Of a stretch of DNA of 64,000 bases, positions 1 to 47,254 are shown piece by piece. This DNA is from Macrostomum lignano (lineage: Eukaryota), in NCBI GenBank assembly GCA_002269645.1, contig NIVC01000647.1, forward strand, positions 124,001 to 188,000, given 5' to 3'. A program made the position numbers and the translations under genes. The notes beneath the pieces are model-generated. The model had not been told where the DNA came from. It did no database searches and saw only the letters and a program-made list of their open reading frames with translations. How positions within the stretch are numbered: the stretch's first letter is position 1; the number at the start of each line of letters is the position of its first letter.

Positions 1-968
1 CATGTTTATTGTTTAAGTTGGTCGTAGTTAAAGTATGTTAATGCACGGGACTTTCGGATTTTTTAAGCACACTTTTAAACAAAAGCATTGTACATTTTTC
101 AACTTCAATTCTATTGTAAAAGAAATTAGACGCTGTAAATTTATCTTTTAAAATTACAAGTAGCTCATTGTCTAAACTTTGAAGAAACGCTTGAAAAAAT
201 CACACGAATATCCACTGTACATCTGCTGCGCAATTTTAAATCCCATACAATTAAACTGTTGACTTATCCATTGTCACCGCGCCACTTATTTATTTATTTG
301 CTCGTAAGCTATCGCAAGTTGGTTTTAACACTCGGGTAAGTTTGTCTTAATAAAAAACTTAACCTAATAGCTTGCTTTTTTAGCCATTTAAGAAATATCG
401 GTTGATTTTTTAATCTAATTTATGTAATAAGACCAGTCGAAATAAGCACAATTTTTCAACCTACCAAACCAATTAAAAATAAATAATGAGCTGGTTTTAT
501 TGATTCAGTAGTTGATTTTGTCAATGTAATCAAATAGTTTTTATATCAAAATGCATTCAGTTTAAATTTGTTTTCAAATATTGAAACTGAAAGTTACAAA
601 ATATTATACATTATAATAGTACAAATTATTAATCATATTAATAAATGATTCTGGTTATTTTAGATTCTGCTTGGTAAAAATGTAATGTAGTTCCCACTTC
701 GATCTAACGCATCTAGGCTATTTATCACATTTTATTCAGAAACAAAGAAAAGTAGTAGTGCTAGTGGTATTATTGTAAAATTTGAATTTTTTTTAATTTG
801 AAAATTTGAATTTGAAATATTTGCATAGTTTTGTTAAATTTTAAGTGGCATTTATTTTATAGGATTCTCTTTCATCTTAAACCTAGACTTCCCATTAATA
901 GTTATAAGAGCCTTCAAGTTTGATGGATTTTCATAAAAACACTTGAACGTGATGAACTGACTTTCAGA

Positions 969-3900
969 ATGAGCAGCACTAACAATCAGCAGCAGAAGGA
1001 TGCAAGCAGCAGCAACAGCACGCAGCCCTCGCTGTCCAGCGCAGCCTCGGGTAGCAACAACTGCGCCAAGACGGAGGACAAGGCCAGCCAAGGCAAGAAG
1101 CCTCGCGGTCCCCGTGCTGGGAGCAAGCGGCACCAGCACGAAGCTGGTCAGAGACAGCAGCAGCGACAGCTGATCCGCTACAACCGGGACACGCTCCTGC
1201 AGATGCGCGACTCCCGCCTGTCATCAGCCTGGCCCAGGGCTCTGAACAGAGCGTACGTGGGCGACGGAGGCCTGTGGGACCCGGTGAAACTCTTCGAGGG
1301 AGAGCGGAAGAGCGCCTTCGAGAGCAAGACGAAGATTGAGCGAGTCAGGAACGGTGAGACTTTCTGCCATTTTTCTCCCATCTTGCCTGATAATTAATTC
1401 TATGTTGATGCTGCAACTCCCTGATCATCGTCGCACCAAACTGAACTTTCAGTTCGTGGTGCCGCCATGGTGCAGCCATCTTACAGCAGCGGGCCCAGCG
1501 CCGAAGACAGCCAGTCGTTTGGAAGGTCATCGAGACGAAGAAGTGAGTTGCTGGCTGCTGCAAATAAAATTTCGTATGGATCATCAATTAATTTTTTATG
1601 TAGGCTCTTCTGTCATCACTTGTGCTAGCGTTACTTCTAACCCACATTCCGTACTAGTTCGAAAAGAAATTGTTTTTACACCAATTTTTTATTTGAAATT
1701 ATCCAAAAAACTTTGCGTCATAGCAAGTGCTTCCATGTGCTATGATGCCTTTCCTATTACTGAGTATTTTAGCTGTGAGAGAGGGGCTTAAGCCAGTTTG
1801 CTGAATCAGGAGAGGTGTGAACAGTTTGCCTGATGCGTAAACCCCCTTTCCCTTAAAAACTGCCCCAGAACTGCCGATTGGTTATAAGTGCAGCCACTTT
1901 GACTTTTTATTATCGATTGTTGAATGTACATATACAAATGTACATTTGTCAGGCTGAACGGTTTGAATTTGGGGGGAGGGGTTGTAGAGGGGGTAAGAAA
2001 AACTGCGTTGGTCCGCCTGGACCTGGACCTAGCCAATCGATTAGATTAGTCTCCTGCTGTGCCTGCGGCTCGCCTACGCTTTTACGAGACCCTCCCTCTC
2101 TTTTCTCTCTGGGTCTGCAATAAAACTATTATAGTTCTACGACCATGACATTCGCGATTACATAATGACATCAAACTCAGTTAAGTTGACCATTGGCGGT
2201 CTGCAGTACACAATTTAAGGCTCGCTTTCTCGCAATCATCTGAATGTGCGCGATTCAAATCTTTGCCGCGATCGCTTAAAATATACTCAACAACATTAAA
2301 AAGTCGCCACCTTAGTGCGCAGTAAATTCTAGCTCAGTATTGACTTTTGAGTGGCGCATTTTGCACGACGCGACGCAGAGTTTTGGGCTGGGTGAGGAGG
2401 GATTGGGAAGAGCGGAGGGCAAAAATTGGACGGATTGAAGCTTCCTCCCGGTTTTCACTGTTTTTTCCTAGCATTTTTTTATATCAAAATGATTGGCCAG
2501 GTAATAGAAAGACTGTTCACTAGGACAGAGTGGCGACTTTTCCATTTTGCTGAGTATAATTTTAAGCTTAGCCAGAAACCTACAAGGACAAGCGGAAGGA
2601 TCAAGCAAAACTTTATGTAACTGATGACAATTTTTTTCATTCATTTATCAAGAAATCAAGGAAAGTGAGATCCAAAAGGACTTAATAGACTCACTAAAAA
2701 GTCCTAACAACCATCTAAACCGCTGTAACTCCGCAGAACGCACCAAAGAGGAGGCGGCGTCTCCCGCGGCGTCTTCAACGCAAAGACAGCGCGGGTGGCC
2801 GCCTGGCAGCGCAGCGGAGACCCAGCAGGCGGCCAAGTCTGCAGAACCGGCGGCGGACGGCAGGAAGGAGCCGCGGGACGACGTCGCCAGAGGCTTCGGA
2901 CCGTCTCGGCTTGGCGGCGGAGGCTCCGCCGGAGGCTTCGTTCGCCGGTCCGACCGGCCAGCGACCGCTGGGGGCGTCGGCGGAGGCGGCTTCGGCAGCG
3001 GCCGAGGAGGTCCGGGCGTCTCCGGCCGGTGGGAGCGAAGCCAAGGCCTACGCGATCCTCAAGGCCTCCGCGGCGGCTTCCAGCCTCCGCGACATCGGCC
3101 CGCCGAGGAGGAGGAGCTGCCCGCCTGGTTCGATGAGGGACCGCTGGACAAGATGGAGAAGCTGGAGTTGACGGGCCTCCCCGAAGACATGGAGGCGGCC
3201 GAGGGCGACGGCGGCTCCAAGAAGACGGAGGCCACCCAGCAGCAGCAGCAGAAGCAGCAGCCTCTCGACGGACTCGGTCTAGGCAGCAGCAGCTTCGAGA
3301 GCGGCGGCGGTTCCTCGTCGCGCTTCGCCAAGTGGCTGGCAGTGGACGAGCCGTCGCAGCCGCAGCCGCAGCCGCCTGCAGCAGAGGCTGGGCAGCGAGA
3401 TGGCGCTCAGCAGCAGCTTGAGCGAATCTTCCAGGACATTCGCGGCAGGCACGGACATGAGACCAAGCAGCAGCCGCAGACTGCACCGAACGTTGGACCG
3501 TCGCTGATGCACCTGCTCTGCCCGCCGCAGCCGCCGCCGCCTCCGCCGCCACATAGGCCGCTGCACGCTCAGGAGGTCGAGGCGAACCTCAAGTCGATGC
3601 TGTTCGGCTCTGAGGCGGCCGCTCCGCCACCACCGCCGCCCGCCGCAGTCGCCGCTGCATCTTCTGAAGGCTCCGCCATGCCGGTTCTGCCGCCGAACGG
3701 GCAGGCGCGGACGCTCGAAGAAATCGAGAGCAGCCTGGGCGCAGCTTCCAGCGGCTCGGACCGCAGCTCCCGAGGCAGCAAGGACAGCCGTGCTATCTAC
3801 AAGCTGATTGGCGACCTGCAGGTGCAAATGCACGACGCTGCTTCCGCCAGTTCTGCCGGAGGTCGCCAGGCCTCGGTGCCGCCTCTGCTTCCGGGCGGCC

Positions 3901-6840
3901 GCCAGGCCCCGCCGCAACATCAGCAGCCGCCGCAGCCGCCGCAGCCACCGCAGCAGCCACCGCAGTCAAAGCCGCTTCAGCCCACAGCTGCCCCCTTCAT
4001 CGCTCAGCATCCGCTTCCGCCTCGTTCGCAGCCTCCGCCACAGCCGCAAAAGCAGCAGCCGCCGACGGCTCAGCCCATGTTCTCCTCTGGAGCTTCGTCG
4101 CAGGCAGCCGCCGCCGCCGCTGCCGCAGCCGCTCAGCGCCGTCTGCCGATGCCCATGCAGGCTCAGCAGCTGCAGCAACTGCAGGCCATGCTGCTGTCGA
4201 ATCTGCAGATGCAGGCTCAGATGATGCACAGCAGCCAGATTTCTGGAGGGCCAGGAAACAAGGCTCACACGCTCAACAAGCTTCTGCCTCAGGTTTGAGC
4301 ACTCTTGCCTTTTTGGTTCTCTGTTGTTGTCACTTGAGTGTTTTGCACCATTTCTTAGTGTTTGCTGTGGCATGAGTCTGCTGTGGCATGAGTGTGTCTG
4401 CTGTGACATGAGTGTGTCTGCTGTGACATGAGTGTGTCTGCTGTGGCATGAGTGTGTCTGCTGTGACATGAGTGTGTCTGCTGAGACATAAGTGTGTCTG
4501 TTGTGACATGAGTGTGTCTGCTGAGACATAAGTGTGTCTGTTGTGACATGAGTGTGTCTGCTGTGGCATGAGTCTGCTGTGGCATGAGTGTGTCTGCTGA
4601 GACATGAGTGTGTCTGCTGAGACATGAGTGTGTCTGCTGTGGCATAAGTGTGTCTGCTGTGACATGAGTGTGTCTCATGTAGTGTCTGCCTTGCAGTGTC
4701 TGCCTTGCAGTGTCTGCCTTGCAGTGTCTGCCTTGCAGTGTCTGCCTTGCAGTGTCTGCCTTCCAGTGTCTGCCTTGCAGTGTCTGCCTTGCAGTGTCTG
4801 CCTTGCAGTGTCTGCCTTGCAGTGTCTGCCTTGCAGTGTCTGCCTTGCAGTGTCTGCCTTGCAGTGTCTGCCTTGCAGTGTCTGCCTTGCAGTGTCTGCC
4901 TTGCAGTGTCTGCCTTGCAGTGTCTGCCTTGCAGTGTCTGCCTTGCAGTGTCTGCCTTGCAGTGTCTGCCTTGCAGTGTCTGCCTTGCAGTGTCTGCCTT
5001 GCAGTGTCTGCCTTGCAGTGTCTGCCTTGCAGTGTCTGCCTTGCAGTGTCTGCCTTGCAGTGTCTGCTTTGCTGTGTCTGCCTTGCAGTGTCTGCCTTCC
5101 AGTGTCTGCCTTCCAGTGTCTGCCTTCCAGTGTCTGCCTTGCAGTGTCTGCTTTGCAGTGTCTGCCTTGCAGTGTCTGCCTTCCAGTGTCTGCCTTCCAG
5201 TGTCTGCCTTCCAGTGTCTGCCTTGCAGTGTCTGCTTTGCAGTGTCTGCCTTGCACTGTCTGCACCATACCTTGCAGTGTCTGCACCATACCTTGCAGTG
5301 TCTGCACCATACCTTGCAGTGTCTGCATAATGCCTTGCAGTGTTCTCACCGTTAGCTCATCAGCTACCATTTGCACCCATTGTGGAAATCTCAAATCGCA
5401 GTTCAGAATCCCTCACTGCATCAGAGTATCCAGCACTTCATCAGCTCCCCACTCGGCAATTTCAGCAGCTGTTTCACAGACCGCCCCATCCGTACCTGCT
5501 CAGAGTAAGTCCGGCAAGCACCCAGAGCTACAGCTTGCCGATGGATTTTAATCCAGCCATTTTAATCCTGAGCGGGAAATGATTTTGTGCCTCCTGCCGC
5601 ACCATCTGGAAAAAATGCGTGTTGTTCAGCTTCTGCAATGTTTTTTTCCACTCCTCCTTAACCCATTGCAGACATTTCGCTGGTACAGAGCCATGGTATG
5701 TGAGGCTGCTGATGCCAGCAGTTTTTCTGGCTGTTCGGCTGCCTTTGAATTTGTTTTTGTTTTTGTTTTTCTCTTTCTGTTAATTGGGTACAAAAAAAGC
5801 TTGGGATGCAGTAAATTCAGAAAAATTCAAGTCGTTGGTTGAAGTTTTGATTTGAGTTTTTTCGTTTTTTATGCTGCGCCAACCACAGAACATTCCTGTG
5901 CACCTGGTTGACTTGCCTGCGCTACACGTCTCGACTTTAGCATTGTATCTGTACCAAAACCCACAGTTACTGTACTCAAACCCGCAGTTACTGTACTCAA
6001 ACCCGCAGTTACTGTACTCAAACCCGCAGTTACTGTACTCAAACCCGCAGTTACTGTACTCAAACCCGCAGTTACTGTACTCAAACCCACAGTTACTGTA
6101 CTCAAACCCGCAGTTACTGTACTCAAACCCGCAGTTACTGTACTCAAACCCACAGCCCCTGTACTCAAACCCGCAGTTACTGTACTCAAACCCACAGCCC
6201 CTGTACTCAAACCCACAGCCACTGTACTCAAACCCACAGTTACTGTACTCAAACCCGCAGTTACTGTACTCAAACCCACAGTTACTGTACTCAAACCCAC
6301 AGCCCCTGTACTCAAACCCACAGCCCCTGTACTCAAACCCAGCCTCCCTGCCGCATCTCGCAGAACAACGCCCTGCAAGGCACCCGGCTACTCAACCAGC
6401 ACTTCAACCAGGCCGGAGCTGCTGCCGACTTTGCCGGACTCGAGACTGCTGCCGGTGCCGACGCCGCCTTCCGCCGCCCGGCAACCTCTGCGGCCGCCGC
6501 CGCCGCCTCGGCGAACTTGTCGACGAGCTCCGCCAGCCAGCAGGCGATCGCCCAGCCCGCGATGCCCATCGTGCCGCCGATGCTGCTGCCGCCAAAGACT
6601 TCGTCGGCGGCGACCTCGGCCAGCGCGGCCGCTGCGGGTCTCCAGGGCTGGGGCGGCGCCCACAACTCGCAGCTCAGCGCCATGCTGTGGAACGCCACCA
6701 GACTCGCCGCCAGCGTCAAGTCGGCCAACACCTCGACTGGCTGGTCGTCTCTGCACCGCAGTCCGCCCGTTGACTCCGGGGTCGGACAGCCGCACCGGCC
6801 TCCGACCAAGCAGCCGGTGGACGAGATGCCGTCCGCTTGA
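969..6840 (+). CDS. EIF4ENIF1: eIF4E transporter (4E-T / Cup-like), copy A. Exons 969-1353, 1453-1542, 2737-4292, (possible 5364-5504), 6343-6840; about 842 aa without the optional exon
   Basis: YNRDTLLQMR...GLWDPVKL matches the 4E-T YxxxxL-phi motif plus the downstream WDP non-canonical eIF4E motif. EEEELPAWFDEGP..KLELTGL matches the Cup-homology (DDX6-binding) motif. GT/AG junctions are phase-compatible (1,1,0). Q/P-rich C-terminal half. The join to the last exon (CAG|GTTTGA to CCCAG|CCT) is inferred. Confidence 0.85.
4364..5340. repeat. Composite intronic minisatellite: 20-bp (TGTGTCTGCTGTGACATGAG), then 14-bp (AGTGTCTGCCTTGC), then 21-bp (AGTGTCTGCACCATACCTTGC)
   Basis: Tandem units read directly; all share a GTGTCTG core. 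Confidence 0.95.
5955..6342. repeat. 21-bp minisatellite (TTACTGTACTCAAACCCGCAG) ending at the splice acceptor
   Basis: Direct tandem units, the source of the LLYSNPQ pseudo-ORF. The mirror array at 18666-19010 has two fewer units (300 vs 286 aa ORFs). Confidence 0.95.
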
Positions 6841-8564
6841 CCTCTTGAGCACTGCTCAGCTGAGCTCACTCGGCCCACAGACACTGCCGAACTCGTAAAT
6901 GCCCCAGTTGTTGCTAGCGACTTTCCAGCACCCCGAGTTTCCTCTCCGACTGACCTTGAATTGTCCCCGCCTTCTCGCCTGCTGCCGTCTCGCTGTCTCC
7001 CTCTTGTCTGCGGTGTTTTTGCAGTTGCAGTCCGCGCCAATTGGCTTTTGGAATTCGAACTCTCGTTTACTTTTCTCCGTCATTGAGCAATATTTTAGTT
7101 CTCTCCTGTTTTAGAGTGCACTCCTGGTGACAGATTATCCCAGCAACTCGATGATGTCGCTGGAATTTCATTTCGCTTTGATCATTTAATTTTCTCTCTT
7201 TGATTTTCCTGTAAATTTTGGCCCTCCGCCCGTTCAGCGCAATGATTTTCTTTGCCTCTTCGACTTTGCGACTTTGCATTGTGAGCAGCTTTGGTTCCAA
7301 CTCTATTTTTGCTAGGCTTTCTCGCTAAGGCTTTTGGGAATTTTTTTCGCATTTTGCTTTGTCCGCCTGCCCGTGAGCTGTGGGATCGCTAATCCCAGCT
7401 CATCAGGGGGAGTTTATGCCATAGCTTTATCCCGTCAGTCTTTGTTGAGCTTTGTAGAAGCAGTTTAGTTACTCGCACCGCAGCAGCACCTCCTCCTTTT
7501 GGAGTCTCATTTTCCAGCGTGCTTTTTTCTGTCACTTTCTGTACTGAGTCTGCAGCACAGACTCCACCGCTCTCCATCTGAGCCATGCGCTTCGATCTTC
7601 AGCATGCCGGCCGGCGCTCCCTGATGAAGTGTCCCGGCCATGCAGGCTGCTCTTCCTTTCCCGGTTGATTTTTGCACAATGTTCTTCCTGTCTACTTTTT
7701 GTCAGTAGTTATCCCGCTCGTGCAGCAGACTCAAGCGCTCAACTAAGATTTGCATTGCGGTTCCACAGTTTCCAGCTTACAGCAGCAGCTCCGGTCTCTT
7801 CCGCATGAATTTGTTGTCACCTGTGCGAGCTGCCGTCTCCCTACCTGCACCGGCGCCCCTCATCAGTACTTCTCTAAGCCAGACCGTATCGCTACTTTCT
7901 CTGTCTCTCCCCCCACGCACCTTCCAGACAGTCTGAAATACATCGAATATGCAGACTTGCAGTTGGCCGAAATTCTGCCTGTTCCTTTCAACCGCACTTT
8001 GCTGTCCGTGTTCGATGTGCTTTCGTTTTGCTTTCAGATCTATCTGTTGTTTACGAGTATCTAGCTGTTTAGAGCAGCGTCCTGAGACTCCACAGAAGCT
8101 AGGGCGCAATGCAAGTTATAAGGCTATCTAAAAAATAAGCATTAGAAGAAGCGTTGTAGCGGAACAAGCGACAGAGCCCACCAGAAAGTCCCCCCAGTGC
8201 TAAAATTACAATAAGATCAGGTTGGCATCTAGCTTGGGAAAGCCTAGGAAGAAAAATTAATTTGGCGCTGGCGTGGCGTGGCTGGGAAAACAATGAGTAC
8301 AACATTTAAATGGATAGCAACTTATAAAGCTGCTTCAAAGGACTGAGAAACGCGTGTATTTGCATGTATTTCGTTTAGTTAAACTCCACCCAGTCGTCGC
8401 TCGTATCACGCCGAACTCATGCAAAGACTACTAACGTTTTTTAAAAGTTAAGGAGGCTGGTTCTTGCCGAAAAAAACATTACAGAGATAGGAAGTTTTCA
8501 TTTTTAGCGCAAAAATTGTTATTGCTTTCGATAGGAGGCAGACTCAATCAATGCTCATTTTTGA

Positions 8565-8959
8565 AGTGGCGGAGCTAGGATTTTGAAACGGGGAGGGGAT
8601 AACTTTTAGGGACAAAATTATAGACTAATAAAATAGTTTTATTGAATTTTTTGCTTAAAATATGCATTTAAAAGTATCAAAATCATGTTTTTTAGGCTAT
8701 AAAAACTTTACTTTGTTAAAATCAGAATAAAGCCGGCAGACGTCTGTCCTGATTAGAGCATTTTAGGAACTAGGGATTCGCGAAAATATCGTTTAAAACT
8801 TTTTATTAGTAATTTACGAGTGAAATAGGCCAATTTTCGGCAATTTCGCTAAGTCTGAGCCGCTTTATTTTGCTTTTTTAAAAAAAACCTCATTTTCGTT
8901 TCCTATAAATCATCCAAATGGGGGGATATATCCCCGTATCCCCCCTAGCTACGCTACTG
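8565..8959. mobile_element. Possible non-autonomous DNA transposon (MITE-like)
   Basis: Imperfect terminal inverted repeats AGTGGCGGAGCTAGG (8565) and CCTAGCTACGCTACT (8944-8958), 13/15 match, around an AT-rich core. No target-site duplication found. Confidence 0.35.
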
Positions 8960-9402
8960 GTTGTGCCTTTCTTATAGCTCTATTGATATTTATAAAGCTT
9001 TTCATTCAGAAGTTCAGAGGCCAATAACCCTGGATCGAATTTGTGGTTTGTTAAAAAATCCAGCGTCATTATTGACATCTACAGTGTACCTCTGAATAAG
9101 AAGGAGCATTGGCAGAGGCTATATCTAATGGTTTTGCAGAAGATAGCAGTCAAGTGACTCAAGACATAAGCATTGAGCCAAGAAGGATACAAGGCGGAAC
9201 AGCTGCACAGCCATCATGAGAAAATAATTTGAGTGCAGAAGTAAAAACCAAGGACTACTAGACTAGATATATCGAAGTGTTCCTAGTGGTCCTTGGTATA
9301 AAAACGACGCCAAACACCGCTAATATCATGCCTAAATGATCACTTAAAATTATCGTATTCAGACTTAAATCACGCTTGAACTTTGCCCAGTCCTCGCTCA
9401 CA

Positions 9403-10136
9403 TCACGCTGAACTTCGCCCAGTCCAGTCCTCGCCGTTCTCGATCTCCGACTCGACCTGAGCGTCGGTGAACAACAGCAGGCGGCACAGCTTCGACCTCC
9501 TGTTGTACAGCGCGCGTCTGCAGTTTTTGTCTCGGCCAGCCGCCGCTACGCAGCTCACAGAGCTCGGCATCCCGGTCAGGTCTTTGTAGCAGTACTCGGT
9601 GCTCGGGTTGTAGCTGGTCCGCTTGAACTCCACTCGCGTCCAGGCGGCCGACCGCAGCTTTGTGGTAGGTCGTCGCCGGCCGGAACTCGAACAGGTAGCC
9701 GCGAGGCCTTTTGCACAGCGAATTGGCGAGGCTGCCAGGATCAGCTCTGCTCAACATTCTCAAGCAGTCTTGCACTTCTGTGCTCGGCTGGCCCACAAGT
9801 CAGAGCGAGTCGTCCTCTGGCAGGTCGCCGTTGTCGTTGAGTCGCTGCCAGCCCGACCTGCTGCGGTTTCGCTCATCGGCCAGGTCGGACACACCGCGAG
9901 CCACAGGTCCGCACCCGAGGCCAGCCTCTTGATGGAGCTGCGGCTGTTCGCCAGCTCGCCTCCGAGCGCCGCGCACTGCAGGTTGGCCTCGCACCAGGAG
10001 AAGCTTTGGTTGGCGTTCCTGAGCAGGCACGGGCCGGACGAATTGGAGAACGGACTCGGGCACAGCGGCTGGGCCTGGGCTGAGCTCAGCCACAGAAGCA
10101 GCAGAAGCAGCAACACGGTCTCAGCTGTGGGTCCAT
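9403..10136 (-). pseudogene. Secreted C-type lectin-like plus PAN/apple-like domain protein, disrupted
   Basis: Leu-rich signal peptide; WCEANLQCAALGGELA (CTL-like); GQP...DC...LC; C-terminal FKRTSY..YC..SC..CRRALYN..LCRLLLFTDA (PAN-like). Frameshifts near 10117, 9891 and about 9650, plus an in-frame TGA at 9800-9802 where Trp is expected. Confidence 0.7.
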
Positions 10137-10207
10137 CTGCAGACCCCCCTATCCGCTTTCATTCTCCGTGCCCGAGCCTCTATTTATGCAATGAAACACA
10201 TAAAAGC

Positions 10208-10221
10208 GTTGCTATGGCAAC
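10208..10221. promoter_or_regulatory. RFX X-box
   Basis: GTTGCTATGGCAAC, a consensus X-box about 70 nt upstream of the lectin ATG (10136). Confidence 0.55.
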
Positions 10222-16447: not shown

Positions 16448-18665
16448 GTAAAGTTTAGATTTTGATGTACTGAAAGTCAGAGGACATTAAAATTTTGTCA
16501 ACAGACTTACGGCAAAGAATGCGTGGCTATAAAAACTTCGACAGTATTCATGTGACATGTATAGGTGATATCAGATCACGGCTTAAACTGTGATTATTGA
16601 CAGGTTTTTAATCTCGTAAACCCCAGAGAGAAATCAGCCTAGGAGTGCGCTTGGCATGACTCGGCATGTCGTATTCACTCTGGGCCCAGATAAAATAACG
16701 CATCCAAAGTTATTCAGCCGAATACTTTTCTGCCTAGGATAATGGTTGGCATAAAACCGGGAAGGCCAGCGCAGAGTGCGCAGCGAAGCTGTAAATTAGA
16801 CTGAACATTTGTCCATGAAGTTACCCAGTTTAGTTTGTACCATTAAGTAGACCCCAGCCACCCCAAAGTGGCAAGAAGCTTCTCGCGTGCCGTATTTTTA
16901 GTTGCGTCACTCACAACAAGTGAGAAAAGTTCATCTCGCTTGGAGGGTGGAACTTTTGACTGTTGCCAAACTTTTGTTGCAAAACGAAAGCACATCGAAC
17001 ACGGACAGCAAAGTGCGGTTGAAAGGAACAGGCAGAATTTCGGCCAACTGCAAGTCTGCATATTCGATGTATTTCAGACTGTCTGGAAGGTGCGTGGGGG
17101 GAGAGACAGAGAAAGTAGCGATACGGTCTGGCTTAGAGAAGTACTGATGAGGGGCGCCGGTGCAGGTAGGGAGACGGCAGCTCGCACAGGTGACAACAAA
17201 TTCATGCGGAAGAGACCGGAGCTGCTGCTGTAAGCTGGAAACTGTGGAACCGCAATGCAAATCTTAGTTGAGCGCTTGAGTCTGCTGCACGAGCGGGATA
17301 ACTACTGACAAAAAGTAGACAGGAAGAACATTGTGCAAAAATCAACCGGGGAAAGGAAGAGCAGCCTGCATGGCCGGGACACTTCATCAGGGAGCGCCGG
17401 CCGGCATGCTGAAGATCGAAGCGCATGGCTCAGATGGAGAGCGGTGGAGTCTGTGCTGCAGACTCAGTACAGAAAGTGACAGAAAAAAGCACGCTGGAAA
17501 ATGAGACTCCAAAAGGAGGAGGTGCTGCTGCGGTGCGAGTAACTAAACTGCTTCTGCAAAGCTCAACAAAGACTGACGGGATAAAGCTACGGCATATTCT
17601 CCACCCAATGAGCTGGGATTAGCGATCCCACAGCTCACGGGCAGGCGGACAAAGCAAAATGCGAAAAAAATTCCCAAAAGCCTTAGCGACAAAGCCTAGC
17701 AAAAATAGAGTTGGAACCAAAGCTGCTCACAATGCAAAGTCGCAAAGTCGAAGAGGCAAAGAAAATCATTGCGCTGAACGGGCGGAGGGCCAAAATTTAC
17801 AGGAAATCAAAGAGAAAATTAAATGATCAAAGCGAAATGAAATTCCAGCGACATCATCGAGTTGCTGGGATAATCTGTCACCAGGAGTGCACTCTAAAAC
17901 AGGAGAGAACTAAAATATTGCTCAATGACGGAGAAAAGTAAACGAGAGTTCGAATTCCAAAAGCCAATTGGCGCGGACTGCAACTGCAAAAACACCGCAG
18001 ACAAGAGGGAGACAGCGAGACGGCAGCAGGCGAGAAGGCGGGGACAATTCAAGGTCAGTCGGAGAGGAAACTCGGGGTGCTGGAAAGTCGCTAGCAACAA
18101 CTGGGGCATTTACGAGTTCGGCAGTGTCTGTGGGCCGAGTGAGCTCAGCTGAGCAGTGCTCAAGAGGTCAAGCGGACGGCATCTCGTCCACCGGCTGCTT
18201 GGTCGGAGGCCGGTGCGGCTGTCCGACCCCGGAGTCAACGGGCGGACTGCGGTGCAGAGACGACCAGCCAGTCGAGGTGTTGGCCGACTTGACGCTGGCG
18301 GCGAGTCTGGTGGCGTTCCACAGCATGGCGCTGAGCTGCGAGTTGTGGGCGCCGCCCCAGCCCTGGAGACCCGCAGCGGCCGCGCTGGCCGAGGTCGCCG
18401 CCGACGAAGTCTTTGGCGGCAGCAGCATCGGCGGCACGATGGGCATCGCGGGCTGGGCGATCGCCTGCTGGCTGGCGGAGCTCATCGACAAGTTCGCCGA
18501 GGCGGCGGCGGCGGCCGCAGAGGTTGCCGGGCGGCGGAAGGCGGCGTCGGCACCGGCAGCAGTCTCGAGTCCGGCAAAGTCGGCAGCAGCTCCGGCCTGG
18601 TTGAAGTGCTGGTTGAGTAGCCGGGTGCCTTGCAGGGCGTTGTTCTGCGAGATGCGGCAGGGAGG

Positions 18666-19010
18666 CTGGGTTTGAGTACAGGGGCTGTGGGTTTGAGTAC
18701 AGGGGCTGTGGGTTTGAGTACAGTAACTGTGGGTTTGAGTACAGTAACTGCGGGTTTGAGTACAGTAACTGTGGGTTTGAGTACAGTGGCTGTGGGTTTG
18801 AGTACAGGGGCTGTGGGTTTGAGTACAGTAACTGCGGGTTTGAGTACAGGGTCTGTGGGTTTGAGTACAGTAACTGCGGGTTTGAGTACAGTAACTGCGG
18901 GTTTGAGTACAGTAACTGTGGGTTTGAGTACAGTAACTGCGGGTTTGAGTACAGTAACTGCGGGTTTGAGTAGAGTAACTGCGGGTTTGAGTACAGTAAC
19001 TGTGGGTTTT
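18666..19010. repeat. 21-bp minisatellite, mirror of 5955-6342
   Basis: GGGTTTGAGTACAGTAACTGC tandem units. Confidence 0.95.
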
Positions 19011-19619
19011 GGTACAGATACAATGCTAAAGTCGAGACGTGTAGCGCAGGCAAGTCAACCAGGTGCATAGGAATGTTCTGTGGTTGGTGCAGCATAAAAA
19101 ACGAAAAAACTCAAATCAAAACTTCAACCAACGACTTGAATTTTTCTGAAATTACTGCATCCCAAGCTTTTTTTGTACCCAATTAACAGAAAGAGAAAAA
19201 CAAAAACAAAAACAAATTCAAAGGCAGCCGAACAGCCAGAAAAACTGCTGGCATCAGCAGCCTCACATACCATGGCTCTGTACCAGCGAAATGTCTGCAA
19301 TGGGTTAAGGAGGAGTGGAAAAAACATTGCAGAAGCTGGACAACACGCATCTTTTTCAGATGGTGCAGCAGGAGGCACAAAATCATTTCCCGCTCAGGAT
19401 TAAAATGGCTGGATTAAAATCCATCGGCAAGCTGTAGCTCTGGGTGCTTGCCGGACTTACTCTGAGCAGGTACGGATGGGGCGGTCTGTGAAACAGCTGC
19501 TGAAATTGCCGAGTGGGGAGCTGATGAAGTGCTGGATACTCTGATGCAGTGAAGGATTCTGAACTGCGATTTGAGATTTCCACAATGGGTGCAAATAGTA
19601 GCTGATGAGCTAACGGTGA

Positions 19620-20545
19620 GAACACTGCAAGGCATTATGCAGACACTGCAAGGTATGGTGCAGACACTGCAAGGTATGGTGCAGACAGTGCAAGGCAGAC
19701 ACTGCAAAGCAGACACTGCAAGGCATTATGCAGACACTACAAGGCATTATGCAGACACTGCAAGGCATTATGCAGACACTGCAAGGCATTATGCAGACAC
19801 TGCAAGGCATTATGCAGACACTGCAAGGCATTATGCAGACACTGCAAGGCATTATGCAGACACTGCAAGGCATGGTGCAGACACACTTATGTCACAGCAG
19901 ACACACTCATGCCTCAGCAAACACACTGCAAGGTATGGTGCAGACACTGCAAGGCAGACACTGCAAGGTATGGTGCAGACACTGCAAGGTATGATGCAGA
20001 CAGTGCAAGGCAGACACTGCAAGGCAGACACTGCAAGGCAGACACTGCAAGGCAGACACTGCAAAGCAGACACTGCAAGGCCGACGCTGCAAGGCCGACG
20101 CTGCAAGGCAGACGCTGCAAGGCATGGTGCAGACACACTCATGTCACAGCAGACACACTCATGTCACAGCAGACACACTCATGTCACAGCAGACACACTC
20201 ATGTCACAGCAGACACACTCATGTCACAGCAGACACACTCATGTCTCAGCAGACACACTCATGTCACAGCAGACACACTCATGTCTCAGCAGACACACTC
20301 ATGTCTCAGCAGACACACTCATGCCACAGCAGACTCATGCCACAGCAGACACACTCATGTCACAACAGACACACTTATGTCTCAGCAGACACACTCATGT
20401 CACAACAGACACACTTATGTCTCAGCAGACACACTCATGTCACAGCAGACACACTCATGCCACAGCAGACACACTCATGTCACAGCAGACACACTCATGT
20501 CACAGCAGACACACTCATGCCACAGCAGACTCATGCCACAGCAAA
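19620..20545. repeat. Composite 21/14/20-bp minisatellite, mirror of 4364-5340 with different composition
   Basis: The GCAAGGCATTATGCAGACACT 21-mer is expanded and the 14-mer much reduced relative to the left arm. Confidence 0.9.
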
Positions 20546-23500
20546 CACTAAGAAATGGTGCAAAACACTCAAGTGACAACAACAGAGAACCAAAAAGGCA
20601 AGAGTGCTCAAACCTGAGGCAGAAGCTTGTTGAGCGTGTGAGCCTTGTTTCCTGGCCCTCCAGAAATCTGGCTGCTGTGCATCATCTGAGCCTGCATCTG
20701 CAGATTCGACAGCAGCATGGCCTGCAGTTGCTGCAGCTGCTGAGCCTGCATGGGCATCGGCAGACGGCGCTGAGCGGCTGCGGCAGCGGCGGCGGCGGCT
20801 GCCTGCGACGAAGCTCCAGAGGAGAACATGGGCTGAGCCGTCGGCGGCTGCTGCTTTTGCGGCTGTGGCGGAGGCTGCGAACGAGGCGGAAGCGGATGCT
20901 GAGCGATGAAGGGGGCAGCTGTGGGCTGAAGCGGCTTTGACTGCGGTGGCTGCTGCGGTGGCTGCGGCGGCTGCGGCGGCTGCTGATGTTGCGGCGGGGC
21001 CTGGCGGCCGCCCGGAAGCAGAGGCGGCACCGAGGCCTGGCGACCTCCGGCAGAACTGGCGGAAGCAGCGTCGTGCATTTGCACCTGCAGGTCGCCAATC
21101 AGCTTGTAGATAGCACGGCTGTCCTTGCTGCCTCGGGAGCTGCGGTCCGAGCCGCTGGAAGCTGCGCCCAGGCTGCTCTCGATTTCTTCGAGCGTCCGCG
21201 CCTGCCCGTTCGGCGGCAGAACCGGCATGGCGGAGCCTTCAGAAGATGCAGCGGCGACTGCGGCGGGCGGCGGTGGTGGCGGAGCGGCCGCCTCAGAGCC
21301 GAACAGCATCGACTTGAGGTTCGCCTCGACCTCCTGAGCGTGCAGCGGCCTATGTGGCGGCGGAGGCGGCGGCGGCTGCGGCGGGCGGAGCAGGTGCATC
21401 AGCGACGGTCCAACGTTCGGTGCAGTCTGCGGCTGCTGCTTGGTCTCATGTCCGTGCCTGCCGCGAATGTCCTGGAAGATTCGCTCAAGCTGCTGCTGAG
21501 CGCCATCTCGCTGCCCAGCCTCTGCTGCAGGCGGCTGCGGCTGCGGCTGCGACGGCTCGTCCACTGCCAGCCACTTGGCGAAGCGCGACGAGGAACCGCC
21601 GCCGCTCTCGAAGCTGCTGCTGCCTAGACCGAGTCCGTCGAGAGGCTGCTGCTTCTGCTGCTGCTGCTGGGTGGCCTCCGTCTTCTTGGAGCCGCCGTCG
21701 CCCTCGGCCGCCTCCATGTCTTCGGGAGGCCCGTCAACTCCAGCTTCTCCATCTTGTCCAGCGGTCCCTCATCGAACCAGGCGGGCAGCTCCTCCTCCTC
21801 GGCGGGCCGATGTCGCGGAGGCTGGAAGCCGCCGCGGAGGCCTTGAGGATCGCGTAGGCCTTGGCTTCGCTCCCACCGGCCGGAGACGCCCGGACCTCTT
21901 CGGCCGCTGCCGAAGCCGCCTCCGCCGACGCCCCCAGCGGTCGCTGGCCGGTCGGACCGGCGAACGAAGCCACCGGCGGAGCCTCCGCCGCCAAGCCGAG
22001 ACGATCCGAAGCCTCTGGCGACGTCGTCCCGCGGCTCCTTCCTGCCGTCCGGCTCTGTAGACTTGGCCGCCTGCTGGGTCTCCGCTGCGCTGCCAGGCGG
22101 CCACCCGCGCTGCCTTTGCGTTGAAGACGCCGCGGGAGACGCCGCCTCCTCTTTGGTGCGTTCTACGAGTTAGACAGGTGGTATTTGAGATTTTTTGAAC
22201 TTTTATCAAACTTTTTACGACTCGTGGTGCTGTTTTGGCCTCGGGAGACACTCTATCCCACTAATACTCGTAGGATGCCATAATATTTAACTTCTTATAA
22301 TACACTTGCTCAACACGCATCAGATTACTTTGGCGTGCACTGCATCGTTAGGAAGCTAAACCATGCATAACCAAGTAAATTATATCATTTTCTTGGATCC
22401 ACATGTACATGTGGGTTCGTGAAAAATAAAAAACGAAGGCTGTCGTGCATGGTCAGGGTAACACAAAGTGTATATGGCCATAAACAAAGCTTTGATCGTG
22501 ATAGAGACAAAGTGCATGCATGGATGAAGGAATAGAAGCTTTGGCTTCTGAGCGATAAAACTGTCTATGGCATGTAGTTCTGCCTCTGACTTTGGCTTCC
22601 CGTCATCAGTCATCTAAAAACACTTCCGGGCCATAGACGGTTTTAATCATGGGCCTCATTTGCTATTCAGTCTCTTCAAGTTGGTCTGAACACGAAGTCC
22701 AGTTATTTCGTTTGCACTCCATAGTATTGTTTGCATTTTTGCGTGTTTAAAACTAGCCCGCAGTTTTTTTTCTTAATTTTTGTGATTTGTACTTTGCTCA
22801 ATTTATCTATTAGTAGTCATCAGCTGACCTAAACCCAGCCTAGCTATCGCATTATCTATAAGCAACAGCATTACCCTTTTGTACCCTCCAAGTCGCATGG
22901 TGGTATGAGTCAGCATGTCACATGACTGGTGCCAAAGGGCAGTCTGATTGGCCCAGCCAACATAATAAATTAGCGATGGAAACATCAATATCGGACTCAC
23001 CCTCTGCCAACTATTATTAACCAAACGGGGTGTACATTAAGTCCAAAAAATTGTCAGAACGGCCGCCCACCACCCCTCTTCTCGATTTGCAATTAACTAG
23101 TTGAATTAATTTCACAACGCCTAGCTTACAATTTATAAGTATTAAATCGTTGTAACACAAATAACACTGCACGTACTAATGCATGAATGTGGACTGCAAA
23201 CATTAGAATGGTCACTTCAATCAAGAAAAACAAAATAACTCACTTCTTCGTCTCGATGACCTTCCAAACGACTGGCTGTCTTCGGCGCTGGGCCCGCTGC
23301 TGTAAGATGGCTGCATCATGGCGGCACCACGAACTGAAAGTTCAGTTTGGTGCGATGATGATCAGGGAGTTGCAGCATCAGCATAGTATTAATTATCAGG
23401 CAAGATGGGAGAAAAATGACAGAAAGTCTCACCGTTCCTGACTCGCTCAATCTTCGTCTTGCCATCGAAGGCGCTCTTCCGCTCTCCCTCGAAGAGTTTC

Positions 23501-26500
23501 ACCGGGTCCCAAAGGCCTCCGTCGCCCACGTACGCTCTGTTCAGAGCCCTGGGCCAGGCTGAAGACAGGCGGGAGTCGCGCATCTGCAGGAGCGTGTCCC
23601 GGTTGTAGCGGATCAGCTGTCGCTGCTGCTGTCTCTGACCAGCTTCGTGCTGGTGCCGCTTGCTCCCAGCTCGGGGACCGCGAGGCTTCTTGCCTTGGCT
23701 GGCCTTGTCCTCCGTCTTGGCGCAGTTGTTGCTACCCGAGGCTGCGCTGGACAGCGAGGGCTGCGTGCTGTTGCTGCTGCTTGCATCCTGCTGCTGATTG
23801 TTAGTGCTGCTCATTCTGAACGGTTAGATGGTTAGATGTTGGACGCACAGAGAATATGTTTACAAAAATTAAAACACTAGTTGAGTTAATTGCTCTCGCG
23901 CGTTTGTCCAGAAATAGGATTGAACTTAAGTTTCTATGAGATTCTGAGTATCGAAGAGTTTTACATATACTTAGCCAGTAAACGCTACAGCGCAATGTCT
24001 CCAATATTCTTTAGAGGCGTTGAAGGTATGGATGAAGTGCTAAATTATCAAGAGATTTAGAGATTAAATTAGAAACTATAAGAGGCATTTTGAAAACCCA
24101 TGTCGAACATTTTAAATGGAGAATACTTCCAGCACCCGAATATCGTCATCGGTAGTCCATCAGTAGTGTGGACTATAAAAGGCAGTCGCGAAACATGGTT
24201 TTGCTTAATTCTATTGATTACAAAAAGAAACTGTTCCCGTGCTATGAACTAGTAAAAATTGAATGAGCAGACAAAAAGCAACACAAAAATTAAATTACCT
24301 TGATGGCTTTAAGACTTGAACTCCCTGGAAATAAAAGGCCCAAAGTTAACGATGCACGAAGCGTAGAGTTAACTTAAAAAAGGATATTATATATGTACAG
24401 TGAAAATTTAGTGCAAAGAAAAATTTTCTGCTTTATTATAAAGTATTTCTAATAATAAAACACTAGTTTTTTTTACAAATAATTGGGAATAAAAATGGTT
24501 TTAACAGCAAGCTGTGTTTCACTTGTTAAACACCGTAAAATAATAGACTAAAGATTCTCAAAAGCAGTTTATGCTGTTTTAGTGTAATTATATTTGTAAA
24601 AACGAATGCTGCATGCAAACTCTGCTAAAATACTTTTTATTGTTTTTTTGTTGTTATGTCACTAGAGTTACCTAAATGATGGAGAATGCTTATAAGCGTG
24701 AAATCTATTACTGTTATTTATTATCAACGTTTTTTATATATTGGTTTCGAAAATTGTGATTCGTAGAAATTGGCGGAATTCAATGAAAAAAGCAGGGAAG
24801 CTAACCTTTGCGAGGCTTTGCCATAGCAATGTTAGCATAGCTTGAGTACCCAATTTAAAATTATTTAGATTTGCAGGCTACTATTTAATGATTTGTAGGT
24901 CTTATTCTATGCATAAATTAACGTAAATCATTAGCCTGGTGGTCTATTAGTATAAAATGCATCGTGATCGTGTATGACAAAAAAATTAGGCTTCTTCTGT
25001 CACATGTGATGATCATGTGTAGATGTGCCAATTCAATGCAATTGTTATTTCTTTAATACTAGGCTCATACCATTATTAGGCCTAACAATAACTTTGACAA
25101 AGCAAAATATGATATATATAAAACTTAAAAGTTGAAAAATCTTGGCATGAGGCTGAGTCTTTAATCCTTTTTTTATTTTATCAATTAAAACCTGACATTA
25201 ACTGTCATTCAAAATTACAAAACTGAATTCATAATGTATAACAAAAACCATCTTCCAATTTGATCCACATGGATCTGTGTCAATAATTTCTAGCTTATCC
25301 CCAAAAGATGGTTTTTGAACAGATTCATTTTAAGGTTATTTATTCCAATAAGCTACCATGGGGATAGGCTAAAAATTATTGACATGGATTTGTGTGGATA
25401 AAATTGGAATTATTGATATTGCCTATATAGACTTGAATGGTGGCAGCTATATTTCAATAAGTTGCTATGGGGATAGGCCCCTAAGCTGGAAATTATTGAC
25501 ACGGATCTGTATGGATAAAATTGGAATTATCCGTATGGAACCATGGGGATAAGCACTTCCATATAAGTAACTATAAACTATGTATAATTAATAATCCTGA
25601 TAATCCTGAACATTAAGCCAAAGAAAATTTAAGAAATGTAGTATGAATTTTGAAAATGCTATTTTAAAATACAATTTTAGTTTATTGAAAGATGGAAGAT
25701 TTTTTAATAGCTTTGGTTTCTTGCTCCAAATTAATTTTCCAAAGTTCTAGATTATTTTTAAAATTTTTAGTCAATTCAAATTAATTTTTTTAATAATAAA
25801 GAAAGCAATAGCTAGTATACCATGCCATGCTATAGTCATTGTACAATGATTCTCTAGGGACACTAAAACTAGATGGCTAGAAACAATGATAAAGGAGGTC
25901 CCTATCTTGTTTCTAATATTCTAAGGTTTCTGTATTGATAATGATAGAAAAAAGTATTAGATTAGACTATAGACTGATAATTTGTTTTTGACTTTGGGTC
26001 ATATTAGTATATCTAAGTCTTATTGCCTCTAACAATGTCAACTAGCTTCTTTGATGCTTTTTAACAATTTTTTAGCATTTTTATACTAGTCTATCTTAAC
26101 CAATCTCTGCTCATATGATAGCAAATATAGTATTTATTAAGTATATAGATTCCAAAGACTTAGATAGGCCCTATTGCAATCTATAATCCCAAAGATGCTA
26201 GGTCCTAGGCAGTCTAGTACTATATGCATGGCATGTATCAATAAGTTAGAAAAGTTATTTTGGCAAGCTTTGCACAGCAATAGTATGGCATATAAAAAGT
26301 AAAAAAATGCATAGCACCATAGTTAGAGCTATCTAGTAGCTGGGCCACAGAAATTTTTAGTCTTTTTACTAAAAAGATATGATACATGTCACTTTTGAAG
26401 TGAGTATTATATATTAATGGTTGTTATTGTATGCACAGTGCATAGGGTTGCGCAATAGTTATAATTTATACATAGTCAATTAAGATAAACTCATTGGGAA

Positions 26501-32579: not shown

Positions 32580-32819
32580 CTCTCTGCCAGCTGGTCGCTT
32601 TCACTCATTTTGAACATGTATCATTTTTTCGTTGATTTATAATATCAACTCGAGGTGTGCGCGCGTCTGTGTATGACTTTTTCCTCGGATCAAAAGATAC
32701 TTGCATGTTTTTCAATGTTCTGTATGATAAATATAAGCGAAAGTAGCCATAGAAACAACTCGATAAATTTATTGATTATTATTTCAGAATTTTAAGATGT
32801 GGGGACTTTAACCTTGCCT

Positions 32820-44482: not shown

Positions 44483-44545
<63 letters not shown>

Positions 44546-47253: not shown

Positions 47254-47254
47254 C

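What the first reader, a model, noticed from the sequence alone, without database searches (positions are those of the whole stretch)
963..23820. 23-kb inverted duplication placing two 4E-T genes tail-to-tail around a captured 8.9-kb cassette
Seen: arms of about 7.1 and 6.8 kb, each with a 4E-T gene plus about 1.2 kb of near-identical 3' flank. They converge on a spacer holding VWA5A-like, a lectin pseudogene, a SINE and an integrase fragment. Known: 4E-T is an eIF4E/DDX6-binding mRNA repressor of P-bodies and germline, and large palindromes promote arm-to-arm gene conversion and spacer inversion. Inference: the spacer could be an invertible polymorphic segment, and read-through transcripts could fold into long dsRNA that feeds small-RNA pathways against 4E-T itself.
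Basis: partly seen in the sequence, partly recalled or inferred. Interest (0 to 1): 0.72.

Follow-up and report, generated by a model that had tools for sequence, protein, structure and literature searches.

The report
Ancient palindrome of two 4E-T-like genes
In the flatworm Macrostomum lignano, two tail-to-tail copies of a translation-repressor-like gene form a real 23-kb palindrome that is present in all three copies of its triplicated genome, keeps its arms alike by copying between them, and has its middle segment flipped in one copy: a clean example of known palindrome behaviour, not a new kind of system.

Summary
The inverted duplication is real and lies at the stated coordinates: arms 963-8031 (+) and 23820-16979 (-), spacer 8032-16978. 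The window is Macrostomum lignano Mlig_3_7 scaffold NIVC01000647.1. The same arrangement (4E-T-like gene, VWA5A-like gene, 4E-T-like gene, convergent) occurs at two further loci on other scaffolds, with identical arm boundaries and the same two non-homologous intron-2 types. It therefore predates the split of the three subgenomes and is not a fold-back or mis-join. Outside intron 2, no site groups arms by side, while 81 sites unite the two arms of this locus. That is concerted evolution by arm-to-arm gene conversion. Relative to the outer flanks and intron-2 types, the spacer here is inverted compared with both other loci. The spacer is ancestral, not a captured cassette: VWA5A-like and a C-type lectin gene are shared by all loci, and the lectin is broken only here. 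The right copy's frameshift is probably an assembly error. 4E-T membership rests on motifs only; Pfam is sub-threshold. The dsRNA/small-RNA idea is untested and unlikely.

The parts
963..8031 (+). Left arm of the palindrome (7,069 nt): 4E-T-like gene plus 1,191 nt of 3' flank
   Evidence: the same boundaries occur in loci B and CD
16979..23820 (-). Right arm of the palindrome (6,842 nt): second 4E-T-like gene plus 3' flank
8032..16978 (.). Unique spacer (8,947 nt). It is colinear with the spacers of loci B and CD but in the opposite orientation relative to the outer flanks.
969..6840 (+). Left 4E-T-like gene. Exons are 969-1353, 1453-1542, 2737-4292, an alternative small exon (5466-5504 or 5672-5695) and 6364-6840. 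It is annotated as PAA79191 / BOX15_Mlig000607g5 (P0001, 843 aa).
18168..23814 (-). Right 4E-T-like gene. The exon structure is the same. The reading frame is broken in this assembly by a 1-nt deletion in a C run. It is annotated only as a 529-aa 3' part (P0125, BOX15_Mlig003831g1).
21725..21729 (-). Frameshift site of the right copy: CCCC on the left arm (ending at 3179) against CCC on the right arm. It is probably a long-read homopolymer error. A protein model from the other DV1 assembly that carries the right copy's diagnostic residues (P0130) is intact here.
1176..1196 (+). Canonical eIF4E-binding motif YNRDTLL (YxxxxL-phi), residues 70-76
   Evidence: the only PDB matches are eIF4E-bound peptides of Mextli and eIF4G
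3108..3179 (+). Cup-homology-domain-like motif EEELPAWFDEGPLDKMEKLELTGL. It aligns to the DDX6-binding peptide of human 4E-T.
   Evidence: 5anr_C, E = 0.11; a sub-threshold Pfam EIF4E-T hit covers this region
1543..2736 (+). Intron 2, L-type. It cannot be aligned to the right arm's intron 2 but is 95-97% identical to the left-arm intron 2 of loci B and CD.
22163..23243 (-). Intron 2, R-type. It is orthologous to the right-arm intron 2 of loci B and CD.
4376..6341 (+). Intronic minisatellites of the left arm: a 20-mer, 14-mer and 21-mer array at 4376-5343 and a 21-mer array at 5949-6341. The right arm has counterparts at 18667-19017 and 19622-20530. Copy numbers differ between arms and loci.
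12610..15396 (-). VWA5A-like gene (VIT + VWA domains, open 928-codon frame; annotated as PAA79192, 891 aa)
9400..10120 (-). C-type lectin pseudogene. It has a frameshift after ...GADLW and a W-to-stop change. The orthologous 204-codon ORF is intact in loci B and CD.
15975..16978 (-). Segment specific to this locus, next to the right arm. It contains a retroelement integrase zinc-finger fragment (ORF 16016-16447).
11971..12374 (.). 14-nt minisatellite downstream of the VWA5A-like gene, also present in loci B and CD

Best explanation
This is one of three paralogous copies (probably subgenomes S, L1 and L2) of an old genomic palindrome in Macrostomum lignano. Two convergent, complete copies of a 4E-T-like eIF4E-binding-protein gene flank a unique centre that carries a VWA5A-like gene and a C-type lectin gene. 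Shown: the inverted duplication arose before the three subgenomes diverged. Since then the arms have been kept alike by repeated arm-to-arm gene conversion. The exceptions are intron 2 and everything upstream of the splice acceptor 6 nt before the ATG; these are heterologous between arms and have evolved independently on each side. Shown in the assembled sequences, inferred as biology: at least one crossover between the inverted arms flipped the spacer. In this locus the 5' end of the VWA5A-like gene faces the R-type arm, while in the other two loci it faces the L-type arm. Five of the six gene copies have intact ORFs evolving under purifying selection. The frameshift in the right copy here is most likely an assembly error. 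The structure therefore behaves as a two-copy gene family maintained by conversion, not as a hairpin-RNA locus.
For: Source and paralogs: searches identify M. lignano scaffold NIVC01000647.1. On this scaffold the accessions PAA79191, PAA79192 and PAA79193 are consecutive (4E-T-like, VWA, 4E-T-like), and scaffold NIVC01002079.1 has the same triplet, PAA61016-61018. Searches show locus B as CRAL_TRIO | 4E-T(+) | VWA(+) | 4E-T(-) | phosphatase. One search shows that scaffolds NIVC01000328.1 and NIVC01000975.1 overlap end to end (14.7 kb, 99.84%) and together form a third palindromic locus, CD. One search shows that arm boundaries in B and CD match those here. Concerted evolution: 339 sites in intron 2 group arms by side, whereas outside intron 2 there are 0 such sites and 81 sites unite A_L with A_R. 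In one search, A_L vs A_R differ at 1/1169 sites in exon 3b, against 19-27 for comparisons with other loci. Inversion: the outer flanks and outer arms of A and B are colinear (B 4166-13749 with A -7957..4675; B 33250-46935 with A 20129..33122), but the spacer is reversed (B 21067-27988 with A 15490..8832; B 28575-30856 with A 8210..5949). One search shows the same result against CD. Coding integrity: five of six copies have 848-854 intact codons and synonymous changes outnumber nonsynonymous about 2:1. One search shows that P0130, from the other assembly, is right-copy-like and intact at the frameshift site. Context: PMC10733133 reports three subgenomes in Mlig_3_7, with L-S divergence greater than L1-L2. 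This matches A being more distant from B and CD than they are from each other.
Against: The spacer orientation rests on assembled long-read contigs only. The inner 2 kb of this locus's arms are 99% identical, and an assembler can mis-orient a palindrome's centre if few reads reach the distinguishing minisatellites (2-3.5 kb in) or intron 2 (5.3 kb in). PMC10733133 reports that 36% of the assembly length lies in chimeric scaffolds. There is no outgroup, so the ancestral orientation is unknown. No breakpoint can be placed, because all A_L/A_R differences are private to one arm. 4E-T identity is sub-threshold in Pfam (20.2 bits against 28.5), and a scan of 1.8 billion representative proteins found no canonical 4E-T. 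No expression data were available.
Confidence: 0.8

Rival explanations
1. Assembly artefact: a fold-back chimeric read or a haplotype/subgenome mis-join created a false second copy.
For: Mlig_3_7 is a long-read assembly of a neopolyploid, with many chimeric scaffolds (PMC10733133). The right copy carries a homopolymer frameshift.
Against: The same convergent arrangement, with the same arm boundaries and the same two intron-2 types, is assembled independently on scaffold NIVC01002079.1 and across NIVC01000328.1/NIVC01000975.1. The arms enclose a 9-kb unique spacer, and each arm has its own flank that is colinear with the matching flank of the other loci. A protein matching the right copy also exists in the other DV1 assembly (P0130).
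Confidence: 0.03
2. The palindrome is real, but the apparent spacer inversion in this locus is a mis-orientation by the assembler inside near-identical arms. The true orientation would then be the same at all three loci.
For: This locus has the most homogenised arms: 99.1% over the inner 2 kb, plus exact runs of 1.2 and 1.5 kb. It is therefore the locus most prone to such an error. The third locus was left split into two overlapping contigs at the palindrome, which shows the assembler struggled here.
Against: The arms differ by a 42-nt indel 2 kb from the boundary. They also differ by very different minisatellite arrays 2.7-3.6 kb in, and by clusters of substitutions 0.6-0.8 kb in. Reads of ordinary long-read length could therefore anchor the orientation. 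The contig is continuous for tens of kb on both sides.
Confidence: 0.2
3. A young inverted duplication: high arm identity reflects recent origin rather than gene conversion.
For: There are long exact runs between the arms.
Against: Both arms, both boundaries and both intron-2 types are shared by three loci that differ by 2-5%. The duplication is therefore older than the divergence of those loci. Yet arms within this locus are far more alike than orthologous arms are (81 sites against 0). Only later homogenisation explains this.
Confidence: 0.03
4. Hairpin-RNA locus: read-through across the spacer yields a long dsRNA that is processed into small RNAs targeting the 4E-T-like gene itself.
For: The arms are convergent and highly complementary. 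No canonical AATAAA/ATTAAA signal was found in the left 3' flank, although signal usage in this species is not known to me. Inverted duplicates of genes do give hairpin RNAs in Drosophila (my own knowledge).
Against: A hairpin transcript would have to cross about 9 kb that includes another gene, plus a complete antisense gene. Both arms keep complete ORFs with an excess of synonymous change. This is expected for protein-coding duplicates rather than for a hairpin-RNA arm, which would be free to decay. No RNA data were available.
Confidence: 0.05

Closest known systems
Large palindromes of primate Y and X chromosomes (e.g. human P6; X palindromes conserved in human, chimpanzee and macaque)
   Same: Inverted arms hold protein-coding genes around a unique spacer. 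Arm-to-arm gene conversion keeps the arms more alike than orthologous arms are. The spacer is occasionally inverted by crossover between arms (PMC3723533, PMC8327919). Minisatellites within the arms vary in length.
   Different: The arms here are shorter (7 kb). They are less uniform (95-100%) and are interrupted by a 1.1-1.2-kb heterologous intron that has escaped conversion. The locus is autosomal, in a hermaphrodite without sex chromosomes. It is present three times because of a recent genome duplication, so the comparison here is between paralogous loci and not between species or individuals.
4E-T (EIF4ENIF1) / Cup family of eIF4E-binding translational repressors
   Same: There is an N-terminal YxxxxL-phi eIF4E-binding motif. 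About 210 residues later there is an LPxWF..GP....(I/L)ELTG(F/L) motif that aligns to the DDX6-binding peptide of human 4E-T in 5ANR. A long Q/P-rich tail follows. An environmental homolog keeps the same motif order.
   Different: Pfam EIF4E-T does not reach its gathering score. An exhaustive HMMER scan found no canonical 4E-T. UniProt names the models from the other assembly 'BAT2_N domain-containing', and no BAT2_N match appeared in the Pfam scan here.
Drosophila hairpin-RNA (hpRNA) loci derived from inverted gene duplicates (my own knowledge, not tested here)
   Same: Inverted copies of a protein-coding gene could, if co-transcribed, base-pair and target the parent gene.
   Different: hpRNA loci have short loops, form one transcription unit and have arms with decayed coding capacity. 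Here each arm is a complete conserved gene and the loop is 9-22 kb containing other genes.
Recombination between inverted repeats that flips the intervening segment (plastid inverted-repeat isomers; human F8 intron-22 inversion; my own knowledge)
   Same: Homologous crossover between inverted repeats inverts what lies between them.
   Different: In those cases both isomers are seen within cells or as recurrent new mutations. Here only one orientation per locus is seen, fixed in each assembled paralog.

Membership tests
Genomic palindrome maintained by gene conversion | Two long arms in inverted orientation around a unique spacer | tested here: met
   Arms 963-8031 and 23820-16979, spacer 8,947 nt. 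The same layout occurs at loci B and CD.
Genomic palindrome maintained by gene conversion | Arms within a locus are more alike than orthologous arms at related loci (concerted evolution) | tested here: met
   Outside intron 2, 81 sites unite A_L with A_R and 0 sites group arms by side. In intron 2, 339 sites group arms by side.
Genomic palindrome maintained by gene conversion | Arm identity above 99% over arms longer than 8 kb (the criterion I recall from the primate sex-chromosome studies; not checked in those papers here) | tested here: not met
   The arms are 7 kb. Identity is 97.8-100% in blocks, about 95% counting minisatellite indels, and nil in intron 2.
Genomic palindrome maintained by gene conversion | Spacer found in both orientations (inversion by arm-to-arm crossover) | tested here: met
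   The spacer is reversed in locus A relative to loci B and CD, while the flanks are colinear. This rests on assembled contigs only; no reads were examined.
4E-T / Cup family | Canonical eIF4E-binding motif YxxxxL-phi near the N-terminus | tested here: met
   YNRDTLL at residues 70-76. A profile of this region matches only eIF4E-bound peptides in the PDB (Mextli E = 0.032, eIF4G E = 0.07).
4E-T / Cup family | Cup homology domain that binds DDX6 | tested here: inconclusive
   Residues 275-306 align to the human 4E-T peptide of 5ANR chain C. The motif is strongly conserved, but E = 0.11. Binding was not tested.
4E-T / Cup family | Pfam EIF4E-T (PF10477) at or above its gathering score | tested here: not met
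   The best score is 20.2 bits (E = 3.3e-4) for P0002, against a cut-off of 28.5. P0127 gives E = 3 and P0001 gives no hit.
4E-T / Cup family | Localisation to P-bodies and repression of bound mRNAs | not testable with these tools
   This needs experiments.
VWA5A-like (VIT-VWA) proteins | An N-terminal VIT domain followed by a VWA domain | tested here: met
   VIT 4.3e-20 and VWA_3 2.7e-22. The protein is 30-36% identical to annotated VWA5A-like proteins of molluscs, cnidarians and chordates.
Hairpin-RNA / endo-siRNA locus | A single transcript spans both arms, and small RNAs of both polarities map to them | not testable with these tools
   No RNA data were available. The structural features argue against it (9-kb spacer with a gene; intact ORFs).

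The most novel reading that the evidence does not exclude
The palindrome is an actively flip-flopping segment. Recurrent crossovers and cross-arm conversions (including between the two large-chromosome variants, as suggested by B_R being nearly identical to CD_L over exon 3) would keep changing its orientation. Orientation would then differ among the three subgenomes and perhaps among individuals, adding locally to the rearrangement-based barrier that keeps the subgenomes of this neopolyploid apart. A further possibility is that convergent transcription of the two arms yields antisense or small RNAs that tune the dosage of a germline translational repressor.
Probability: 0.1. Interest if true: 0.6.

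Novelty: new member of a known kind. Interest (0 to 1): 0.36.

Why it matters
This is a clear autosomal, invertebrate example of a gene-bearing palindrome whose history can be read from three paralogous copies within one genome. The duplication came first. Genome triplication followed, then continued arm-to-arm conversion, with one intron acting as a block to conversion, and at least one flip of the spacer. For M. lignano it gives a concrete, sequence-level case of the intrachromosomal rearrangements proposed to differentiate the S, L1 and L2 subgenomes (PMC10733133). For users of Mlig_3_7 it flags three annotation problems. The right copy is truncated by a likely homopolymer error. One locus is split over two overlapping scaffolds. 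CD_R, annotated as 454 aa, is full-length in the exon model used here. It does not reveal a new mechanism.

Tried and rejected
(1) Fold-back or mis-join artefact: rejected after the same structure was found on other scaffolds. (2) Captured cassette: rejected because the whole spacer, apart from 15975-16978, is shared with loci B and CD. (3) Right copy as a pseudogene: the frameshift is a single C missing from a C4 run, and a right-copy-type protein from the other assembly is intact there, so it is probably an error. (4) Locating the inversion breakpoints from diagnostic sites: this failed because every A_L/A_R difference is private to one arm and the inner arms of B and CD are homogenised. (5) Confirming 4E-T by remote homology: Pfam is sub-threshold. 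The exhaustive HMMER scan returned only a repeat-protein false positive (P0133, a LAP1-type protein) and one short true homolog (P0134). (6) SINE: no tRNA-like gene, no Rfam hit and no dispersed copy. (7) Relation of the integrase fragment to the LTR element in locus CD: none detectable. (8) Poly(A) signals to define transcript ends: none found in the left 3' flank, which is uninformative. (9) GC content as a sign of biased conversion: the 3' flank inside the arm is 50% GC, against 38% in the adjacent spacer and 40-42% in intron 2. This is suggestive but confounded by UTR composition. (10) Literature: no paper mentions this gene or palindromes in M. lignano. The supplement of PMC10733133 held as text does not list these scaffolds.
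Full report
OBSERVATION. The left arm is 963-8031 (7,069 nt). The right arm is 23820-16979 on the reverse strand (6,842 nt). The spacer is 8032-16978 (8,947 nt). Homology comes in two blocks. Block one is 963-1549 vs 23820-23237 (97.8%). Block two is 2726-8031 vs 22172-16979, about 95% when minisatellite length differences are counted. Block two includes exact runs of 1,501 nt (3180-4680) and 1,207 nt (5991-7197). The 1.1-1.2 kb between the blocks cannot be aligned.

GENES IN THE ARMS. Splice-site reading and translation give the left gene the exons 969-1353, 1453-1542 and 2737-4292, an alternative small exon (5466-5504 or 5672-5695), and 6364-6840. The non-alignable stretch is intron 2. The arm begins 6 nt upstream of the ATG, at a TTCAG acceptor that is identical in both arms. 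It ends 1,191 nt after the stop codon. The product matches GenBank PAA79191 (BOX15_Mlig000607g5) of Macrostomum lignano at 99%. The window is therefore scaffold NIVC01000647.1 of assembly Mlig_3_7, starting near base 124,001.

IS THE GENE A 4E-T? The protein has an N-terminal YNRDTLL motif. The only PDB matches to it are eIF4E-bound peptides of Mextli and eIF4G. About 210 residues further on is the motif EEELPAWFDEGPLDKMEKLELTGL. It aligns to the DDX6-binding peptide of human 4E-T in 5ANR (E = 0.11). Pfam EIF4E-T gives only sub-threshold, colinear hits: 20.2 bits against a cut-off of 28.5. An exhaustive HMMER scan of 1.8 billion representatives found one spurious repeat protein and one short homolog. 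The contig of that homolog keeps the same order of motifs. I therefore call the gene 4E-T-like. It works like a 4E-T on motif evidence, but formal family membership is not established.

SPACER. The spacer carries three features. One is an open 928-codon VIT+VWA frame at 12610-15396(-), related to VWA5A-like proteins of many animals. One is a C-type lectin pseudogene at about 9400-10120(-), with one frameshift and one W-to-stop change. One is an integrase zinc-finger fragment at 16016-16447(-). I could not confirm a SINE.

ARTEFACT OR REAL? The protein cluster of PAA79191 revealed further copies. Fetching their contigs gave two more loci. Locus B is on NIVC01002079.1 and reads CRAL_TRIO gene | 4E-T-like (+) | VWA5A-like (+) | 4E-T-like (-) | phosphatase gene. 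Scaffolds NIVC01000328.1 and NIVC01000975.1 each end inside the structure. They overlap by 14.7 kb at 99.84%. Together they form a third palindromic locus, CD, whose spacer also carries an 8.7-kb LTR retroelement. Both outer and inner arm boundaries are the same in all three loci. Each locus has one L-type and one R-type intron 2. A fold-back read or mis-join cannot produce the same structure three times on diverged sequence. This count of three fits the report that Mlig_3_7 contains three subgenomes, S, L1 and L2, with L-S divergence larger than L1-L2 (PMC10733133). Locus A is the most divergent of the three. I infer that A is the S copy and that B and CD are L1 and L2. This assignment was not tested.

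CONCERTED EVOLUTION. I aligned the six arms and counted site patterns. In intron 2, 339 sites group arms by side (L-type vs R-type). Everywhere else no site does so, while 81 sites unite the two arms of locus A against all four arms of B and CD. In exon 3b, A_L and A_R differ at 1 of 1,169 sites, whereas comparisons between loci differ at 19-27 sites. The duplication is thus older than the split of the loci, and the arms were homogenised afterwards. This is arm-to-arm gene conversion. Intron 2 and the upstream region act as heterologous blocks that conversion has not crossed. Among B and CD there is also cross-arm sharing: B_R and CD_L differ at 2 of 1,186 sites in exon 3b. This points to exchange between opposite arms of different loci. 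All differences between A_L and A_R are private to one arm. They are therefore new mutations that arose after the last homogenisation.

INVERSION. With the outer flanks and intron-2 types as fixed markers, locus A and locus B are colinear through the left flank and outer left arm (B 4166-13749 with A -7957..4675). They are also colinear through the outer right arm and right flank (B 33250-46935 with A 20129..33122). The spacer, however, runs in the opposite direction (B 21067-27988 with A 15490..8832). In addition, the spacer end that adjoins A's left arm adjoins B's right arm (B 28575-30856 with A 8210..5949). CD has the orientation of B. The simplest explanation is at least one crossover between the inverted arms since the loci diverged. 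The breakpoints lie somewhere between exon 3 and the inner arm ends.

CAVEAT ON THE INVERSION. The evidence is assembled contigs only. The arms of locus A are the most similar of the three, and the assembly is known to contain errors. I put the chance that the inversion is an assembly mis-orientation at about 0.2. Distinguishing markers do exist 0.6-3.6 kb from the boundary, so ordinary long reads should have resolved the orientation.

THE SPACER IS NOT A CAPTURED CASSETTE. All of it except 15975-16978 is shared with loci B and CD. The VWA5A-like gene is intact in all three loci. The lectin is an intact 204-codon ORF with a Lectin_C domain in B and CD and is broken only in A.

CODING STATE. 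Under one exon model, five of the six copies have intact ORFs of 848-854 codons. Synonymous differences outnumber nonsynonymous about 2:1 between loci, which indicates purifying selection. The right copy in this window lacks one C of a C4 run inside the motif-coding region, and its annotation was truncated to 529 aa. A protein from the other DV1 assembly (A0A1I8HLX1, P0130) carries the right copy's diagnostic residues and is intact there. The frameshift is therefore probably a homopolymer error.

FUNCTIONAL INFERENCES. The dsRNA/small-RNA idea could not be tested. It is structurally unlikely, because the two units are complete, conserved genes separated by 9-22 kb containing other genes. I give it about 0.05.

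COMPARISON AND VERDICT. The closest known systems are the gene-bearing palindromes of primate sex chromosomes. Their arm-to-arm conversion and rare spacer inversions are documented (PMC3723533, PMC8327919). This locus behaves the same way. It differs in having shorter, less uniform arms, in being autosomal in a hermaphrodite, and in being triplicated by recent polyploidy. It is a new member of a known kind. Its interest is moderate, mainly as a well-resolved example and as a concrete rearrangement distinguishing M. lignano subgenomes.

A NOTE ON HANDLING. The LTR retroelement in locus CD was noted only by coordinates and Pfam domains of the annotated product. I did not extract, print or reconstruct it.

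Noticed in passing
window 21725-21729 (right copy) vs 3176-3179 (left copy): A single C is missing from a C4 run and truncates the annotated right copy to 529 aa (P0125). A right-copy-type protein from the other DV1 assembly (P0130) is intact there, so this looks like a homopolymer error in Mlig_3_7.
   Followed up: partly
L002/L008 (NIVC01000328.1, bases 1-36486) and L004/L005 (NIVC01000975.1, bases 363078-396614): Two scaffolds end inside the third copy of the palindrome. They overlap by 14.7 kb at 99.84% (6 mismatches, 17 gap positions). They are one locus that the assembler left unjoined.
   Followed up: yes
L002 about 14539-23240 (locus CD spacer): An 8.7-kb LTR retroelement is inserted at the point equivalent to window 11059/11060. 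Its roughly 835-nt terminal repeats are 99.5-99.6% identical, so the insertion is recent and specific to this paralog. It was noted by coordinates only.
   Followed up: partly
window 963-968 and 23815-23820: Arm homology starts exactly at a TTCAG acceptor 6 nt before the ATG in all six copies. The upstream sequence is unrelated between arms. This may be a trans-splice or 5'-UTR intron acceptor, which would give the two copies different promoters.
   Followed up: partly
loci B and CD, exon 3b and the segment equivalent to window 5344-5948: The right arm of B and the left arm of CD are nearly identical (2 differences in 1,186 sites), while each differs from its own partner arm at about 19 sites. 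This suggests sequence exchange between opposite arms of different paralogous loci.
   Followed up: partly
locus B 26400-27500 and the equivalent region in CD; window about 9400-10120: An unannotated, intact single-exon ORF for a secreted C-type lectin (204 codons) exists in loci B and CD. Only the copy in this window is a pseudogene.
   Followed up: yes
window 44378-49414: A 5-kb (GTTA)n microsatellite of about 1,260 copies, with extreme GC skew.
   Followed up: no
window 57691-60311: A 2.6-kb array of a 20-nt unit, one of many minisatellite arrays in the window. Others lie at 28939-30111, 33631-34590, 36839-37940, 38759-39558, 42632-43698, 50695-51698, 52929-53689 and 62395-63191.
   Followed up: no
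window 36239-37124 and 39731-40616: A direct repeat of 887 nt at 98.5% identity, flanking minisatellite arrays. It may be a local duplication or the ends of an element.
   Followed up: no
P0002-P0004, P0130 (UniProt entries from the other M. lignano assembly): These models are named 'BAT2_N domain-containing protein'. No BAT2_N match appears in the Pfam scan here, and the only family with any signal is EIF4E-T, below threshold.
   Followed up: partly
L009 (ENA ERZ25070786 contig ctg94721l, 7,161 nt): An environmental contig encodes a diverged homolog with the same motif order: the eIF4E-binding motif, then LPEW..GP..ELQ.LP, then RTLEEIES. It is the only relative found outside M. lignano, and its organism is unknown.
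   Followed up: partly
P0129 (PAA74168, locus CD right copy): It is annotated as 454 aa, but under the exon model used here this copy has an intact 848-codon ORF, so the annotation is probably truncated.
   Followed up: partly
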